A stretch of DNA of 64,000 nucleotides from Vitrella brassicaformis CCMP3155 (GCA_001179505.1 CDMY01000389.1:1-64000), one strand, 5' to 3'; positions 54,287 through 60,036 are shown, counted from the stretch's first letter. Numbers and translations are program-made. The notes: a model not told the origin generated them from the sequence alone.

Positions 54287-55237
54287 CTGCTGTTGATGGG
54301 ATGGCTTGCAAGAGGGAAAATAGCCGTTGCATGTCAGCGTCGATAGCGCGGTGCGCCAAATGCATTTTTGCGTGTTGATTTATCGCATTCATGACGTCGT
54401 AGGTTAGGTGCGTACATGTATGTATTTGTCATCAGAAAGAAACAAGGACAGAGTAGGTTAGGCTCAATGGCTGGCTGTATGAGTGACTTCACGTCATGAC
54501 TCTTGTGTGGCATTTCATCGATTAGATTAGTGGTGACGGCAATCAGCTTCCAGATCTCAGAGGCAATATAATATTCGCAACATCTCGATATCTCTCACAC
54601 GCACAGGGTACACGGCAGAAGTCAGTCGAGTGGATGGCTACGAAAGGCAAGCTAGGAGACAGACATGTAGTGGATGAAAGACATTTAGAGGATTTGAAAT
54701 GTACGCTGCGACCCAAAAGCCTGCTCCTGTGTCTCCACCTATGCACCCATCGCCGCCTGCCCACCCACTCGCTCTCGGGCAGACTGAGAGGGCAGCCGAT
54801 GGCCTCGAGGTCCGTGGGGCACCTTCAGCATGTCCTTGCACCCCTACCCTGGCCGTCTTGTCAGCGTCAGATTCTCACTCTCGCCAGTCTTACGGGGTTT
54901 TCCTGCTCGCGCTGTCTCCTGCAGTCGCTGTCTTTTGTCTCCTCGCAGAAGGGCAGAATAGAATTGATGCGGTGGAAAGCGATGTTACAAGACCATTCAA
55001 ACATCAACATCCGCATGGCAATAAAGTTAGGATGCACTGACGACCCCCACCGGTCATTGCGTGTACACACACATACACAAATGCACTCCCCACACAAACC
55101 CTCATGCACCAACAGACAGGCCCTTTCTTTTGCAGAAAGGGCTCGGCTCAACTCGTATGGTTGTGTCTCCATCACATACAGCTAGTAGTCTACCTAGGGG
55201 TCTAGAAAGCCGGTTGGATGATCCATCTGAGAATGCA

Positions 55238-58200
55238 TCAAAACTCGAGAGAGATCAAAGTGTACACGTCAGCAAGATTCCCAACACTAGAGTCGAAGTA
55301 TTTGCCATTTGTCTCCTGCACCCATGGAACAGACAGACAGACAGACAGACAGTCAGAAGAATGCAGGAAACGTTGATGCAAGTGACGTCAGGAGATACGA
55401 TGGTCGATGGAAGGGGGAAAGAAAGAGGAAAACTCACCTCTGCGATTTGGCGAAGATATTCTGTGGCCTCTTCCCTCTGGGCTTCATTCATATTGCTGAG
55501 GTCGAAGCCGACCGTGTATATGTGTACCGCATCAGACGACTCCTGGTTCGGCAGGACGTTGTACACATCCTCCTTGCTAATGTGCCCAGCGTCCCTTGAG
55601 TCCACGCCGTCAGTCATGAGCACGATGTCCCAGGACTTGTCGAATGTGTCGCTGATATTGTTCCTCTTGTCATTGATGAGGTCGATGGCGTCCCTCGTGG
55701 CGTTGTATAAAGCCGTCGTTGACCCTGAATCATTGAACAGGACAGTGCATGGGGGTCCATTGGTGTGTGGTGCGCTCAACGTTTGCCCTGTGTCTGTATC
55801 GGCTCGCCAGGATCCTACCAATCAAGAGGTCATCGACCTCATTAAGAAGAGCTTGCCTCTTGTCTCTTATCAGCCCTGCAGTCGTAAGCCGATTAAGGCG
55901 CAATTCCCCCTCCCTCCCTTGCATGCGTGTCTCTCTCTGTGTACGCTGCTCATACCTGACTGCTGCTCAAGAAAAACCACCTCGAAGTTGAAGCGAATGA
56001 GATACAGCTTTGTGGAAACACACACCAGGCAAGCGCACTCAGTCGATGAACCTGTCAGCATTCTAGCTTGTGGCCTACCTCATCATGGTCCTGCATGGCG
56101 CCCAGAAAGTCACGCACGGCTGGCAGACAGGAGACAAGACACCAGCGCACGAATGCTGTGTGCGCAAAGTAAGTAACCTACCCTACCTGCTTTCATCTCA
56201 GCAGTCTTGGACCCAGTCATAGAACCGGAGACGTCTAGCACCAGCACCACCACGGCGGGCTTTTTGTTGGCCTTCCATGTGGTGATGACGGCGTCAATCA
56301 CGCTTGTGGTGGGGAAGGGCCTGACATCAAAAGCTTTCTGCTCATGCACGTGGCACGTCCGTCATATGAGAGGCTTACAGCTGAGGCGTCTGCTTGGCCG
56401 GTATCACACCATTCTCGAGCAGAAAGGGGGCCGTGCCTGCTCGACAGAGACACAAATGACATGGGCTGTCTGTTCAAAACGCCTTGATATCGATCGATCG
56501 ATCGATCGATCGATGACCTGCTGGGGATATTTCCCTCGTTGAATCCCACGCTCTGATGCCGTAGTCCAGCAAGCCATCAGCCCTGTCTGGTGGGTGTTGC
56601 AATCGTGCGAGGGAGGGAAGCATGCAATAGATACAACAATGCCAACTGTGGTATTTATTGGTGGCCAACCCACCCGAGTCAGTCGCATAAGCGATGAAAC
56701 TCTCGGCCGCTGCCACCTTTTGTGCGAGCACACTGGTGCGTGGATACCATCGACAGTTATGTGTCTCACCCACCTGTTCGGTGCTGGTCCACGATGCGCC
56801 GTCCTGATGCATCAACACATACGCAGCGGGCAGTCTGGATGATACATGTACCTTGGGCATGGGGCTGTGGATGGAGTGTGGCTTACGAGTATGCACAACG
56901 GGTGGTCCATGTAGTAGGTTCCGTCAGACGGGTAGATGAAGACAAAATCTGAACAATCAGTGGACAGACAGACAGACCCCCACTCGTACCACGCTGGCCG
57001 GTTGTTTGGTCGGCGTTTTGCTGGCTCACCATCGTTCCAAGCCGCTGCACGGCATTCGTGTTCCACACGCGTTCACAGACAAAGAGAAGACACCGCTGTC
57101 GCCTCCTGCCGCCAGCCAAGTCCGTGTCCGTGTGTCTCACCGACCTTTGGTGTTGTTGTTTTTGTTCCAATTTATCTGCAGCAAAGTCAGTCAGTGGAGG
57201 GACACACCGCTCAGTCAGAACGGACACAACACGAGCCATGGGAAGTCCGTCCATCTTTGGTCACTCGCTCACCACATTGGACTCATAATTCGCCACGGCA
57301 TGCAGATATCCCGGCCCATTCTGCACCATCCTGGTCCAGCCGCACACAAAAGCCATGGATTAATCCAGTCCTTCGAGGAAGCTCCTTGTATTGTACCTTG
57401 CCAGTATATCTGTGTCGATCTGTGCGATGAAGCAGGGACACATATATATGCAGAATTGTCTCCTTCAAGCGACCAATCGACTATCCATCGGCTGGGTACC
57501 TTCCCCATGTGGGTGACGCCCCTCGCAAGCGACCTGATGTCCTCAATAATTGCAGGATCTGTCAAGCCAGGGGCATAAGTCACATGTCTCGTGCGACTGT
57601 GTATCCTATCTTTTCTGCATCACCGTTCAGGTCATTTGCCTGCAGCACCTGATCGTCCCCCTTATATGCGTATATGGACGCCAGAAGGCTTAAGCGGCCG
57701 CTGTTGCTGCTCTCGGGGTGGCCGTGACCATACGCAAACCTGCCCCTGCCGGCCAGAGACTCGTTCACGGTCGCCCAGCCACTCTCGTTCTTGGCCAAAT
57801 CGGCGATCCGTCTCCAGCTTATGTCTGCATCAGGCCAACCCAGTGCCTCTGCAAACCTACACCCACACAGTGAGACAGGCAAACTGCTAACGCCCGTCAG
57901 TGGCATACGTGTCTCGGGCAGTTACTTGCGCCACATGGCTAAACCAAGCGGGCTGCCAAAAACAAGAGCACACATTGGATTGGATGAGGAGAGGAGACCG
58001 TGAATGGTATTTTTTCATTCCTTCTCCTGTGCATTCCATCCTCACTCACATGTTTGTTGTCGAGCTGCACTTGGTGCTGCGCACAAAGAAAAGAGACACC
58101 ACACACGTATCACTCGCACACGCCTAGCGGATGAATGCGCCACCCACCCACTCACTCACTCTATGTCAGTGACGAGGACTGAGCCCTCTTCGTTTTTTGA

Positions 58201-59240
58201 TCTCACCCACAGCCTGTTGGCGGGCGACCAGATCTGTGGCAGCAGCGACTGGTCCAGCGTGCTGCCCGTGTGGTGCACCGTCACCACCACCTGCTTGTTG
58301 TTGACCCTCATACTGGCGGCATTATAGTCATCCACCTGATTCCATCCAGCCAGCCAGCCAATCAATATCCGGCAGATGTGTCAGCATCTTCTTTCGTCGC
58401 ACCATTTGCTGCAGCCAGGGCTCTTTGGTGTTTGCTGACTGGATGACAAGGCTTGTTGTAGTGGGGGGGGCCTGGGTGGTGGTAGTGGTAGTGGTGGTGG
58501 TGGTGGTTGGCCTCCGCGTGGTGCTGCGGACAGACGAGGAGCTCGATGACGAGGATGAGCGGTTACCCAAAGCGGCACCAAGTATCCCGCCGATGAAGGC
58601 CACCATGATGGCCACAGAGAAGAGTGTGAAACACACAATCGCCGCTGGCTTGAGCTTCTGTCGCGACACACAGAAAAGCGCACCTGGCTGGCTGGCCCAT
58701 TCATGGTGTACAGAATATATCGCGTCCCTACCTTTCCGTCTGGCGTGAGTATGGTCCTTTTCCAGCAGTCAACGGCACTCTGCGCCCCACCAGGCGACCC
58801 AACCTGCACTGGTTGTGGCGGTGGCGGTTGGGGTGCGGCTGCGTAAGGGCCCTGGCCGTACACCTGCGGCTGAACGCCAACGGCATAGGGTGACTGGTAC
58901 GGCTGCACAAACAAATAGCATACAGACCACACAAATACACATGCATAAAGACAGATGAAAGGCGTATGTGGGGCTTGCAGGAAATGACCTGCGTCGCCTG
59001 GTATGGCCTTGCTGGTGGCCCAGGAGCGTAGGGCTGCACCTGAGGCTGACCGAACGGCTGCTGGAGTCCGGGCTGGGCAGGCTGCTGCTGCACGATGATG
59101 ACGGGCTGCTGCTGCACCGGCTGTGCGGCCTGTGTAGGCTTGCCATTGATGTTGGCGTGGCTGTCAAAGGACGGGGCTGCCCCTGTGGGTGAGTCATAAC
59201 CAGGAGGTGGACCCGAATAACGAGGTGGAGCTGACGCCAT
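55238..59240 (-). CDS. Bacterial-type extracellular solute-binding domain + von Willebrand factor A protein with a Pro/Gln-rich N-terminal tail and TM anchor (multi-exon)
   Basis: AEALGWP..ISW..IA.LA..GW, GHGHPESSNSG, MVQNGPGYLHAVANYE, FIYPSDGTYYMDHP, then KKPAVVVLVLDVSGSM (MIDAS), TALYNA, IVLMTDG, HIYTVGF, LRQIAE|ETNGKYF...VYTLISLEF*. TM segment IVCFTLFSVAIMVAFIGGILGAAL is followed by a Ser/Thr stalk. Confidence 0.8.
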
Positions 59241-60036
59241 TTCTTTAACAAGAAAGACGGAGAGACCCCCACCAGGCCCCCATGGCGATCGGCGTCTCTT
59301 CGGGATTTTCCTCATGGCGCTGGAAGGCCTCAGGGCTGGGAATGGTCTTAACCGCAAGGATGAGAGGAAATATGGTGGGGAAACGGAGACAAACCTGATT
59401 GTTGACGCCGGCTGGGTGGATGGATGGATGGATGGCGTGTATTCATTCATTCATTCGGCGTCCTCATGAAGACACTTGGCATTCATTTGGACGAGACTAG
59501 CATGTGCGTTTGACGGAGGAGGAGTTCTTTGAGCATGGTGGTGTGTCGACGAGCATTGCATTGACGCGATAAGTCAGTCCACGTTGTATATGCCCGACAC
59601 ACGCGTTGCCCAGCTCAACCAGCCCATGTATGTCAGCAGGAAAGAAAACTCCTCACGCGACGAGCGCCAAAACAGGCAGACATCTCATCCACACAAATTG
59701 CATCCACAGACACGGTCAGTGGCTTGGCTTCCTGTGCACGTGCAGTGTGCGGGCTAGTCGAGAAAGCTATCTCTCTGTAGTGCACAAGTGCGCCACTGTC
59801 ACACACGACATCATATGGTGTGAGTACCCTCGGCAGACCGACACGCAGACAGCCACTCCTTCAGCGCTATGGCAAGACTCATAAATACTACCATCCCATC
59901 CGTGTGGACACAGATGGATAAAAGAAACCCATAAATGGACGACTGCAGACAGGCAGGCAGGCAGGCAGGCACTCACCCACGAGAACACGCGACAAACAGA
60001 CGGACAGACCTCACAAATACTCGGTATCGACACTAG

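What the first reader, a model, noticed from the sequence alone, without database searches (positions are those of the whole stretch)
55238..59240. Bacterial solute-binding + vWA protein domesticated as an intron-rich type II membrane protein
Seen: motif order from AEALGWP through SNSG, GPGYLHA, YPSDGT..DHP, LDVSGSM and TDG to a terminal ...VY.LI..EF* follows the prokaryotic SBP-vWA architecture I recall mainly from Actinobacteria and Chloroflexi. Here it is split by about ten introns and preceded by a Pro/Gln/Tyr-rich cytosolic tail, one TM and a Thr-rich stalk. Inference: a horizontally acquired ligand-sensing or adhesion surface receptor. This is notable because apicomplexan adhesins such as TRAP/MIC2 use vWA domains, though with the opposite (type I) topology.
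Basis: partly seen in the sequence, partly recalled or inferred. Interest (0 to 1): 0.7.

Follow-up and report, generated by a model that had tools for sequence, protein, structure and literature searches.

The report
Bacterial-type surface protein gene in Vitrella
The alga Vitrella expresses an intron-rich gene for a membrane-anchored surface protein of bacterial origin (a solute-binding domain joined to a vWA domain), but a few chytrid fungi, a foraminifer and unnamed environmental eukaryotes carry the same family, so it is a moderately interesting case of gene transfer and not unique to Vitrella.

Summary
Window 59240-55238 (minus strand) is a real, expressed nuclear gene of Vitrella brassicaformis. 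One spliced 2513-nt RNA contig joins the N-terminal tail and TM exons to the SBP-vWA exons.

The protein has five parts in order:
- a Pro/Gln-rich cytosolic tail with two PPxY motifs
- one TM helix
- a Ser/Thr stalk
- a class-II solute-binding fold
- a vWA domain with an intact MIDAS

It scores 555 bits against a profile of non-Vitrella homologues. A 58%-identical paralogue lies on contig C738.

The family is overwhelmingly bacterial: at least 580 loci, with Chloroflexota/Anaerolineae closest. Vitrella is not a lone recipient, though. Its genes sit in a strongly supported (100/99) clade that appears to be eukaryote-only, with Sorites, chytrid fungi and intron-bearing environmental sequences. 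That clade is sister to an Anaerolineae-like subgroup. All full-length eukaryotic members share the long cytosolic tail. The N-terminal anchor itself is inherited from the bacterial proteins.

Bacterial origin is supported. A direct transfer specific to Vitrella is rejected (AU p 0.005). Kinship with TRAP/MIC2 is not supported. The ligand and function are still inferred. I rate it a new variant of a known kind, of moderate interest.

The parts
54981..59258 (-). Transcribed span seen as one spliced RNA contig (5'UTR at least 18 nt, 3'UTR about 257 nt)
   Evidence: X6 record 14, 2513 nt, laid from 59258 to 55000 with 19 nt more beyond. Record arithmetic.
55238..59240 (-). Coding region: 23 exons, 22 GT-AG introns, 2238 nt, 745 aa
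   Evidence: joints.
58989..59240 (-). Exon 1: start codon and the first part of the cytosolic Pro/Gln-rich tail, with PPxY motifs PPRY (aa 5-8) and PPGY (aa 12-15)
   Evidence: piece 58989-59258 of the RNA contig.
58732..58902 (-). Exon 2: rest of the tail, ending in the basic juxtamembrane stretch DCWKRTILTPDGK
   Evidence: RNA piece 58732-58902.
58403..58657 (-). Exon 3: TM helix (aa ~146-172, about 58645-58565), Ser/Thr stalk (aa 173-210, about 58564-58451) and the start of the SBP domain (LVIQSANTKEPWLQQM)
   Evidence: Kyte-Doolittle scan; composition; RNA piece 58400-58657.
58160..58335 (-). Exon 4: SBP lobe 1 (HHTGST..IWSPANRLW..)
   Evidence: RNA piece 58160-58332 fixes the donor at 58160.
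58050..58076 (-). Exon 5: 27-nt micro-exon (TKCSSTTNI) carrying the family's conserved Cys
   Evidence: The RNA contig's record positions fit only if this exon is included. The paralogue reads DNLCFSTTTIPLGL at the same place.
57926..57952 (-). Exon 6: 27-nt micro-exon (PLGLAMWR)
57624..57856 (-). Exon 7: AEALGWP ... HGHPESSNSG, the most family-specific block of the SBP domain; used as the search query
   Evidence: RNA piece 57624-57854.
57500..57558 (-). Exon 8
   Evidence: Joints 57558|57624 and 57419|57500.
57397..57419 (-). Exon 9: 23 nt (IDTDILA)
   Evidence: Joints.
57273..57330 (-). Exon 10: GPGYLHAVANYESNV
   Evidence: Joints 57329|57396 and 57175|57273.
57145..57175 (-). Exon 11: 31 nt
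57030..57044 (-). Exon 12: 15-nt micro-exon (AAWND), which I did not predict from the DNA
   Evidence: table 5c: 14 letters lie between 56949 and 57145. Located. The paralogue has SAWDD at this place.
56887..56948 (-). Exon 13: FVFIYPSDGTYYMDHPLCIL
56774..56803 (-). Exon 14: 30 nt
   Evidence: Joints.
56674..56716 (-). Exon 15
   Evidence: Joint 56586|56674 settles the junction that was ambiguous from the DNA alone.
56518..56586 (-). Exon 16
56379..56436 (-). Exon 17: linker between the SBP and vWA domains
56187..56320 (-). Exon 18: start of the vWA domain; MIDAS D559-x-S561-x-S563 at about 56235-56221
   Evidence: (weak VWA hits to this exon alone); RNA piece 56187-56319.
56079..56119 (-). 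Exon 19
55956..56007 (-). Exon 20
55819..55875 (-). Exon 21
55438..55724 (-). Exon 22: vWA core with MIDAS T628 and D663 (MTDG)
   Evidence: RNA piece 55437-55723 in X6 and X1.
55238..55315 (-). Exon 23: conserved family C-terminus ...NGKYF...VYTLISLEF and the stop codon
   Evidence: family consensus ends FLISSEF; RNA piece 55000-55314.

Best explanation
This is an expressed nuclear gene of the chromerid alga Vitrella brassicaformis. It encodes a 745-aa single-pass membrane protein with its N-terminus inside the cell and its C-terminus outside.

Shown:
- The gene has 23 exons and is fully spliced in RNA.
- The ectodomain (aa ~211-745) belongs to the bacterial 'substrate-binding and VWA domain-containing protein' family. 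It is a class-II, cluster-D-like periplasmic-binding fold packed against a vWA domain whose MIDAS residues (D559, S561, S563, T628, D663) are all kept.
- A second copy lies on contig C738.
- The Vitrella genes belong to a clade of eukaryote sequences (Sorites, chytrid fungi, intron-bearing environmental sequences). That clade nests inside bacterial diversity next to an Anaerolineae-like subgroup.

Inferred:
- One bacterium-to-eukaryote transfer of an already N-terminally anchored exoprotein was followed by gain of a long P/Y-rich cytosolic tail and of introns. In this copy a mucin-like stalk was also gained.
- The patchy distribution came about either by eukaryote-to-eukaryote transfer or by many losses.

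Likely function, also inferred: the protein sits in the plasma or endomembrane with the SBP-vWA module outside. The SBP cleft (conserved SANTKE, WSPAN, HPESSNSG, YPSDGT..DHP) would bind a small solute, possibly an oxyanion or amine as in its nearest structural neighbours. The MIDAS would bind a metal-coordinated acidic ligand. The PPxY motifs of the tail would connect the protein to WW-domain proteins such as Nedd4-type ligases, for sorting or turnover.
For: - Gene structure and expression: (one 2513-nt spliced contig in X6; spliced contigs in X1), with the model and record arithmetic.
- Organism: a 72.7-Mb genome in 1064 contigs.
- Family membership: exon 7 alone finds 217 representatives. 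The joined model scores 555 bits against an HMM of 51 non-Vitrella homologues and keeps 45 of 50 columns that are at least 90% conserved. The paralogue passes the Pfam cut-offs for SBP_bac_8, VWA and VWA_2.
- Fold: the AF2 model of the paralogue's ectodomain has pLDDT 90.9 and pTM 0.90. Foldseek matches its SBP half to sulfate-binding protein, PotF and AfuA, and its vWA half to ITIH and alpha2delta.
- Bacterial breadth: at least 580 loci in species genomes, with Anaerolineae the best matches.
- Eukaryote clade: 100/99 support under LG+C20+F+G4 PMSF, and 100/100 for its union with the Anaerolineae-like group. The AU test rejects Vitrella plus the bacterial subgroup as one clade (p 0.005).
- Eukaryotic nature of the relatives: chytrid genes carry introns and have eukaryotic neighbours. 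The P0015 and P0193 loci carry introns, and P0015 has an upstream tail/TM exon.
- Shared tail-plus-TM architecture in eukaryotes, against short N-termini in bacteria.
- PPxY motifs. WW domains in the genome.
Against: - No experiment or ligand is known for any member of the family, bacterial or eukaryotic, so the function is inferred from anatomy only.
- The structure model and the Pfam hits are for the paralogue (66% identical over the ectodomain), not for this protein.
- The eukaryote clade has long branches. In the 55-row quick tree that kept the longest rows, its backbone was unresolved.
- The AU group was named after I had seen the tree.
- Canonical PPxY motifs occur in both Vitrella copies and in Gonapodya JEL0774, but not in all eukaryotic members.
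- Membrane topology is predicted, not measured.
Confidence: 0.7

Rival explanations
1. Vitrella acquired the gene directly and recently from a Chloroflexota-like bacterium, independently of other eukaryotes.
For: By pairwise score, the best full-length hits of the paralogue are ~580-aa bacterial-type proteins (38-42% identity, E down to 1e-131). They rank ahead of the chytrid proteins at 30-35%. The best genome loci are Anaerolineae MAGs.
Against: The tree puts Vitrella inside a 100/99 clade of eukaryote sequences. Forcing Vitrella together with the bacterial subgroup costs 46.5 lnL units and is rejected (AU p 0.005). The long cytosolic tail ahead of the TM is shared with the other eukaryotic members. 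The higher pairwise identity to bacteria is explained by the chytrids' long branches.
Confidence: 0.1
2. The protein is a tethered solute-capture protein that hands a nutrient to a membrane transporter, as ABC and TRAP transporter SBPs do. On this reading it is neither a signalling receptor nor an adhesin.
For: The SBP half has a cluster-D transport-SBP fold: sulfate, polyamine and sugar-phosphate binders are its nearest structures. One Nowakowskiella homologue (P0037) is annotated as a fusion of SBP-vWA with a 12-TM MFS transporter.
Against: I saw no ABC permease or ATPase genes beside the two closest bacterial loci that I scanned. Bacterial members are instead found fused to a cytoplasmic Ser/Thr kinase (P0029) or a caspase-EACC1 module (P0183), which points to sensing. 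The invariant vWA partner has no role in classical solute transport. The MFS fusion may be a gene-model artefact.
Confidence: 0.2
3. It is a chromerid forerunner or relative of the apicomplexan vWA adhesins (TRAP/MIC2 family) used in gliding and invasion.
For: Both carry a MIDAS-bearing vWA domain on the cell surface. The family profile hits TRAP only weakly (E 1e-4).
Against: The profile hits ITIH (E 1e-19), bacterial vWA proteins and alpha2delta far better than TRAP. There is no thrombospondin repeat. The topology is opposite. The vWA domain is inseparable from the SBP domain across bacteria. No apicomplexan sequence appeared among the 40 hits whose names I looked up, the named hits of the word search, or in the eukaryote clade.
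Confidence: 0.03
4. The stretch is bacterial contamination, an assembly artefact or a dead pseudogene.
For: None beyond the bacterial affinity of the domains.
Against: There are 22 spliceosomal introns, a spliced transcript in two runs from different studies, and an unspliced DNA contig identical to the window. The frame is open throughout and 45 of 50 conserved family positions are kept. The base composition matches the flanks. A second intron-bearing copy lies elsewhere in the genome.
Confidence: 0.01

Closest known systems
Bacterial 'substrate-binding and VWA domain-containing protein' (for example Isosphaera pallida WP_168155930.1 / ADV63760.1 and the Anaerolineae MAG 'solute-binding protein' P0159; JGI labels these 'Ca-activated chloride channel family protein')
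   Same: Same domain order and motif set: S-x-NTKE, WSPA, AEALGWP, HPE-SNSG, GP-YLHA, YP-DGT..DHP, D-x-S-G-S-M, G-TAL, MTDG, and a C-terminal ISSEF. Both have an N-terminal membrane anchor with the module outside the cell. The paralogue is 38-42% identical over about 560 residues.
   Different: The Vitrella gene has 22 introns, a 141-aa Pro/Gln-rich cytosolic tail with PPxY motifs where bacteria have a 3-10-aa N-terminus, and a 38-aa Ser/Thr stalk. No function has been established for the bacterial proteins either.
Eukaryotic homologues: Gonapodya prolifera KXS22321.1 ('vWA-like protein'), Gonapodya sp. JEL0774 KAJ3337265.1, Nowakowskiella KAJ3119133.1, Cladochytrium replicatum, Sorites sp. 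MMETSP0191
   Same: They fall in the same 100/99 clade. Where the N-terminus is complete, they have the same layout: P/Y/N/S-rich cytosolic tail, one TM, then SBP-vWA. They carry introns and sit in eukaryotic gene neighbourhoods.
   Different: They are only 30-35% identical to Vitrella (Sorites 48% over exon 7). They have 3 to 12 introns, with at most one position each shared with Vitrella. One is fused to an MFS transporter. They belong to other supergroups (Fungi, Rhizaria).
Cluster-D periplasmic binding proteins: sulfate-binding protein Sbp (PDB 5um2, 1sbp), PotF/SpuD/SpuE, AfuA
   Same: The paralogue model shares their two-lobe class-II fold (target-normalised TM-score 0.6-0.7).
   Different: Sequence identity is 10-16%, and a family profile finds none of them by sequence. 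This protein is not part of an ABC importer and is permanently fused to a vWA domain.
vWA domains of ITIH1/ITIH4, the CaV alpha2delta subunits and CLCA
   Same: These are the best sequence and structure matches for the vWA half, and all have a MIDAS.
   Different: The resemblance covers this domain only. The protein has no CLCA metalloprotease domain, no Cache domains and no ITI heavy-chain regions. The database label 'Ca-activated chloride channel family protein' rests on the vWA domain alone.
Apicomplexan TRAP/MIC2 adhesins
   Same: Both present a MIDAS-bearing vWA domain on the cell surface.
   Different: TRAP/MIC2 proteins are type I, this one is type II. It has no TSR domain and no acidic Trp-containing tail, and the sequence similarity is weak (E 1e-4 against 1e-19 for ITIH). 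The evolutionary source is different.

Membership tests
SBP-vWA family ('substrate-binding and VWA domain-containing protein') | Full-length similarity to the family profile across both domains | tested here: met
   A local HMM of 51 non-Vitrella homologues scores the joined model at 555 bits, covering HMM positions 30-570 and residues 180-745. Exon 7 alone finds 217 representatives at E <= 1e-3.
SBP-vWA family ('substrate-binding and VWA domain-containing protein') | Conserved family positions and the terminal ...ISSEF motif | tested here: met
   45 of 50 columns that are at least 90% conserved are kept. The protein ends ...VYTLISLEF.
SBP-vWA family ('substrate-binding and VWA domain-containing protein') | Pfam SBP_bac_8/SBP_bac_11 plus VWA above the gathering scores | tested here: inconclusive
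   Met for the paralogue P0001 (SBP_bac_8 31.2 bits against a cut-off of 27; VWA 35.9 against 23.8; VWA_2 42.5 against 27). For the window's own protein only single exons could be scanned, and these gave sub-threshold VWA hits (E 0.005).
SBP-vWA family ('substrate-binding and VWA domain-containing protein') | N-terminal membrane anchor with the module outside the cytoplasm | tested here: inconclusive
   There is one hydrophobic segment at aa ~146-172, with a more positively charged N-side flank. The bacterial members have a TM at residues ~1-30. The topology is predicted only.
vWA domain with functional MIDAS | D-x-S-x-S ... T ... D metal-coordinating residues | tested here: met
   D559, S561, S563, T628 and D663 are all present and align with the invariant family columns.
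Class-II (cluster D) periplasmic binding protein fold | Two alpha/beta lobes joined by a hinge, with structural similarity to solved SBPs | tested here: met
   Shown for the paralogue's ectodomain model (pLDDT 90.9). Foldseek matches: 5um2 at E 4e-11 with target TM-score 0.69, then 1sbp, PotF and AfuA. The window protein is 66% identical over this region.
ABC/TRAP-transporter solute-binding proteins | Genetic or physical coupling to a cognate permease and ATPase | not tested
   Only two bacterial neighbourhoods were scanned (L010, L011), and neither showed a permease. Not examined in Vitrella.
TRAP/MIC2 adhesins | Type I topology, vWA plus thrombospondin type-1 repeat, acidic cytoplasmic tail with a terminal Trp | tested here: not met
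   The TM helix lies upstream of the ectodomain. There is no TSR-like segment anywhere in the 745 aa (the ectodomain is fully accounted for by SBP plus vWA). The tail is Pro/Gln-rich, not acidic. The profile hit to TRAP is weak.
CLCA ('Ca-activated chloride channel') family | N-terminal CLCA metalloprotease domain ahead of the vWA domain | tested here: not met
   The region upstream of the vWA domain is an SBP fold. The only match to CLCA is through the vWA domain (6pyo, E 7e-8).

The most novel reading that the evidence does not exclude
A single bacterial SBP-vWA exoprotein gene was captured by a eukaryote, fitted with a PPxY-bearing cytosolic tail, and then passed between distant eukaryotes (alveolate alga, foraminifer, chytrid fungi, others). 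On this reading it founded a previously unrecognised family of type II surface receptors. These would sense an extracellular small solute through a bacterial-type binding cleft and report it through ubiquitin-ligase-dependent endocytosis.
Probability: 0.15. Interest if true: 0.65.

Novelty: new variant of a known kind. Interest (0 to 1): 0.4.

Why it matters
It is a clean and well-documented example of a bacterial extracytoplasmic module becoming a normal eukaryotic gene. The gene now has 22 introns including 15- to 27-nt micro-exons, has been duplicated, is expressed, and is under constraint.

It also defines a small family, apparently eukaryote-only, spread over three supergroups, whose members share an added cytosolic tail. 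That pattern bears on how often genes move between eukaryotes after a first bacterial capture.

The two Vitrella copies differ at about half of their intron positions, so they give a dated substrate for studying intron gain and loss.

The gene does not illuminate the origin of apicomplexan adhesins. No function is known for the family in any organism, so the practical weight is modest until a ligand is found.

Tried and rejected
- Exon-by-exon Pfam and NCBIfam scans gave nothing above threshold, only weak VWA hits to exon 18. Single exons are too short.
- My first model left out the 27-nt exon 58076-58050 because I thought it broke the frame. It does not: 27 nt keeps the phase. The RNA contig's record positions require it. 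Likewise the 15-nt exon 57044-57030 was found only from the RNA.
- The alternative donor at 58207 and the alternative junction of exons 15/16 were rejected by the RNA joints.
- A PDB search with the family profile found only the vWA half. No solved SBP is detectable by sequence.
- Bacterial gene neighbourhood as a clue to function: an OmpR-type response regulator sits next to the two closest loci, but only in 9 of 80 loci overall, which is near background. I dropped this line.
- A 168-row FastTree and a 55-row quick tree that kept the longest branches (Nowakowskiella JEL0078 P0024, Chilomastix P0122, Cladochytrium P0050) left the eukaryote backbone unresolved. I left those rows out of the careful tree and name them in the full report.
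- Four paper searches found nothing on this family or its accession numbers.
- The word search with the paralogue did not return the window's own product.
- I did not run complex prediction, because no binding claim rests on it.
Full report
**What is there**

The finding lies on the minus strand. I built a splice model by hand from GT..AG sites and frame continuity. I then corrected it twice against RNA data.

The final model has 23 exons and 22 introns. All introns are GT-AG, 57-122 nt long, 1765 nt in total. The CDS is 2238 nt and encodes 745 aa, from the ATG at 59240 to a stop codon ending at 55238.

**Transcript evidence**

The look-up of sequencing runs listed six runs that hold the stretch. 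I laid four of them on window:55000-59500.

- Run X4 holds one unspliced contig identical to the window, so it is DNA.
- Run X6 holds a single 2513-nt contig that skips every listed intron of the model and runs from 59258 to about 54981.
- Run X1, from another study, holds spliced contigs of the 3' part.

The X6 contig settled two junctions that were ambiguous from DNA alone: the exon-4 donor at 58160 and the junction 56674|56586. It also revealed a 15-nt micro-exon (57044-57030, AAWND) that I had missed.

Checking the contig's record positions against cumulative exon lengths showed 27 further nucleotides between exons 4 and 6. These are the 27-nt exon 58076-58050 (TKCSSTTNI). It carries the family's conserved Cys, and the paralogue has the same segment. 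With both micro-exons included, every piece listed in table 8 fits to the base.

The tail and TM exons are therefore physically joined to the SBP-vWA exons in one RNA. All of these runs are kept as contigs, so they say nothing reliable about expression level or RNA ends.

**Handling of the spliced model**

The joined protein has no reference, so I did not send it to any database search, family scan, structure, atlas or complex tool.

- Searches used single exons by reference: exon 7 (window:57625-57855:-) and exon 22 (window:55438-55722:-).
- Full-length searches used the deposited paralogue P0001 as a proxy.
- The joined model was assembled only inside scripts, from window.fa by coordinates. 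It was used there for translation, local alignment, a local HMM score and the trees.
- The trees used the version that lacks the 9 residues of the 27-nt exon, which does not matter for topology.

**Organism and copies**

The genome has 72.7 Mb in 1064 contigs.

A search of the genome with exon 7 and with exon 22 finds exactly one other locus, on contig C738. Its product is in public databases as CEM31883.1 / A0A0G4GNN3: "unnamed protein product" and "VWFA domain-containing protein", Vitrella brassicaformis CCMP3155, on a contig of 284,789 nt, the same length as C738. It is 58% identical to the window protein overall and 66% identical over the ectodomain. It has the same tail, TM, SBP and vWA layout but no Ser/Thr stalk.

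**Anatomy of the protein**

- aa 1-141: 22% Pro and 17% Gln, with PPRY at 5-8 and PPGY at 12-15. This part ends in a basic juxtamembrane stretch.
- aa ~146-172: the only hydrophobic segment.
- aa 173-210: runs of Ser and Thr, consistent with a mucin-like stalk.
- aa ~211-530: the solute-binding-like domain.
- aa ~550-745: the vWA domain, with D559-x-S561-x-S563, T628 and D663 intact.

There are five N-x-S/T sequons in the ectodomain proper, plus one at N173 at the start of the stalk. The positive-inside rule, the sequons, the stalk and the orientation of the bacterial homologues all point to N-in/C-out. This topology is predicted, not shown.

**Family**

Single exons are too short for Pfam or NCBIfam. 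Exon 7 searched against 1.84 billion representatives gave 217 proteins at E <= 1e-3. Most are 550-650 aa long.

The paralogue and other hits pass the Pfam cut-offs for SBP_bac_8 or SBP_bac_11 together with VWA and VWA_2. NCBI's name for bacterial members is "substrate-binding and VWA domain-containing protein". JGI's label "Ca-activated chloride channel family protein" reflects only the vWA domain.

Nearly all of the best are Chloroflexota (Anaerolineae). Others are Planctomycetota, Pseudomonadota, Myxococcota and Acidobacteriota.

A profile of 51 non-Vitrella members scores the window's protein at 555 bits over both domains. The protein keeps 45 of the 50 most conserved columns.

**Fold**

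A family profile finds only vWA domains in the PDB: ITIH4 at 1e-19, ITIH1, ArnB, alpha2delta, CLCA, and TRAP at just 1e-4.

An AlphaFold model of the paralogue's ectodomain is confident (pLDDT 90.9, pTM 0.90), which suggests that the two domains form one rigid unit. Foldseek matches the N-terminal half to cluster-D binding proteins, with target-normalised TM-scores of 0.6-0.7: sulfate-binding protein 5um2 and 1sbp, the PotF/SpuD/SpuE polyamine receptors, and the sugar-phosphate binder AfuA. It matches the C-terminal half to the ITIH and alpha2delta vWA domains.

I could not inspect coordinates. The idea that the conserved SANTKE and HPESSNSG motifs form an oxyanion-type site at helix N-termini is my inference from what is known of Sbp, PstS and ModA. 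It is not a result.

**Where the gene came from**

Named eukaryotic hits are few:

- Sorites sp. (MMETSP0191)
- the chytrids Nowakowskiella (two strains), Cladochytrium replicatum (two genes), Gonapodya prolifera and Gonapodya sp. JEL0774
- a Chilomastix cuspidata transcript, on a long branch and unverified

The chytrid genes are genuinely genomic. They have 3 and 12 introns and neighbours such as dynactin p22 and cytochrome b5.

By pairwise score, the paralogue's best full-length matches are bacterial-type ~580-aa proteins (38-42% identity), ahead of the chytrids at 30-35%. The trees say otherwise:

- A 96-row quick tree (LG+G4) put all eukaryotes in one clade with SH-aLRT 99.
- A 55-row mixture-model quick tree that kept very long rows left the backbone unresolved.
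- For the careful tree I left out seven long-branch rows: Chilomastix P0122, Cladochytrium P0050, P0041, P0194, P0177, P0196 and P0183. The resulting 48-row tree (LG+C20+F+G4 PMSF) gives 100/99 for a clade of the eight named eukaryote rows plus four unnamed sequences. It gives 100/100 for the union of that clade with an Anaerolineae-like subgroup (L010, P0151-P0159, P0004).

Three of the four unnamed members look eukaryotic on inspection:

- P0011 is a 35%-GC, 1989-nt single-ORF contig with an A-rich 3' end.
- The P0015 locus has an upstream tail/TM exon and a SANTKQ exon, with introns between them.
- P0193 is split from its vWA half by a short GT..AG intron.

An AU test rejects a tree that holds the Vitrella pair together with the bacterial subgroup (delta lnL 46.5, p 0.005). 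The caveat is that I named the group after seeing the tree.

There is independent support from architecture. Every eukaryotic member with a complete N-terminus has a 20-140-aa P/Y/N/S-rich tail ahead of the TM. Bacterial members have 3-10 residues there, or a cytoplasmic Ser/Thr kinase (P0029), or a caspase-EACC1 module (P0183).

The most economical reading is one capture from an Anaerolineae-like donor by some eukaryote. The gene then either moved between eukaryotes or was lost many times. Nothing closer to Vitrella than its own paralogue turned up in libraries that include EukProt. This is limited by the fact that I could look up names for only 30 of the 150 listed hits.

**Introns**

The two Vitrella copies share about 11-12 intron positions. 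The rest are private to one copy. That alignment used the version of the model without the 27-nt exon, and the paralogue's annotation is unverified.

One Vitrella position coincides in place and phase with Gonapodya JEL0774 (after HPLCIL, phase 0). One coincides with Nowakowskiella (phase 1, after NNNTK). By my own rough count, about 0.15 and 0.04 coincidences would be expected by chance. This is suggestive, but parallel insertion at proto-splice sites cannot be excluded.

**Mechanism**

Shown: the anatomy, the conservation and the expression described above.

Inferred: a surface-exposed two-domain binder, held away from the membrane on a glycosylated stalk. The SBP cleft would take a small solute and the MIDAS a metal-bridged acidic ligand. 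Bacterial fusions to kinase and caspase modules argue that the ectodomain is used as a sensor.

The two PPxY motifs in this copy, two PPPY in the paralogue and PPKY in Gonapodya JEL0774 suggest recruitment of WW-domain proteins. The genome has at least 24 WW-domain matches.

A transport-feeding role is the main functional rival. The Nowakowskiella SBP-vWA-MFS fusion hints at it.

Gene neighbourhood in bacteria gave no usable signal.

**Comparison and novelty**

The protein is a member of the bacterial SBP-vWA family by every test I could run. It is not a member of the TRAP/MIC2, CLCA or ABC-importer SBP families.

I found no paper on the family, on these accession numbers, or on this transfer. 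The paralogue is deposited only with generic names.

The eukaryotic branch, with its added tail, stalk and introns and its patchy spread over alveolates, Rhizaria and fungi, appears undescribed. I rate it a new variant of a known kind. It would interest people who study gene transfer and intron evolution. It would not surprise a specialist, and it opens no long-standing question.

Noticed in passing
window 57030-57044, 57397-57419, 57926-57952, 58050-58076 (minus strand): Four micro-exons of 15, 23, 27 and 27 nt in one gene, all used in the RNA contig. The 15-nt exon could not be predicted from the DNA. I also wrongly rejected the 27-nt exon 58076-58050 at first. Gene models in this genome probably miss such exons often.
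   Followed up: yes
G000:C738 about 142384-146127 (L006 4384-8127): The paralogue (CEM31883.1, 714 aa) shares only about half of its roughly 19 intron positions with the window gene. It lacks the Ser/Thr stalk and has an internally duplicated tail (PPPYAPEWSADDAKQVNVTVQPVSNPHVYGQPLTMDPG, twice). Its annotated first residue is not an ATG in the DNA that I mapped.
   Followed up: partly
(word search with P0001): The window's own product did not appear among the hits, although it is 58% identical to the query. The gene may be unannotated, or annotated with a very different length, in the public protein set.
   Followed up: no
P0037 (Nowakowskiella sp. JEL0407, 1091 aa): This protein is annotated as one product: tail, TM, SBP-vWA and then a roughly 12-TM MFS transporter. 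It is either a real receptor-transporter fusion or two merged gene models.
   Followed up: no
P0029 (848 aa, Logan) and P0183 (884 aa, Streptomyces sp.): These bacterial members have a cytoplasmic Ser/Thr kinase domain, or a caspase of the EACC1-associated type, ahead of the TM and the SBP-vWA module. The module therefore serves as the outer part of different signalling proteins.
   Followed up: partly
L007-L086 (bacterial loci): 107 ORFs of at least 350 aa matched the family in 80 loci, so about a third of the loci carry two copies, apparently in tandem (matches about 2.7-3 kb long).
   Followed up: no
P0122 (Chilomastix cuspidata, EukProt transcript, 847 aa): A metamonad transcript hits exon 7 (E 9e-6) but sits on a very long branch. 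It may be a divergent homologue or bacterial contamination of the transcriptome.
   Followed up: no
window 56957-56977 and 58141-58161: Contigs of X6 (depth 285) and X4 match only 21 letters at each of these two places, with 154 other letters in between. This is probably a short repeat shared with another locus, not an alternative splice form.
   Followed up: no
window 56480-56515; 55322-55363; 59418-59436: Tetranucleotide microsatellites lie inside introns and the upstream flank: (GATC)n in the intron 56437-56517, (GACA)n in the last intron and (GGAT)n upstream of the gene.
   Followed up: no
window about 59315 (minus strand): An in-frame ATG 75 nt upstream of the start at 59240 (giving MRKIPKRRRSPWGPGGGLSVFLVKE-MASAPP) has no stop between. 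The RNA contig begins at 59258, downstream of it, so I kept 59240 as the start. The true 5' end is not established by contigs.
   Followed up: partly
window 55061-56176 (plus strand): A 371-aa open frame runs antisense to exons 18-23. It has no support and is most likely a by-product of the base composition.
   Followed up: no
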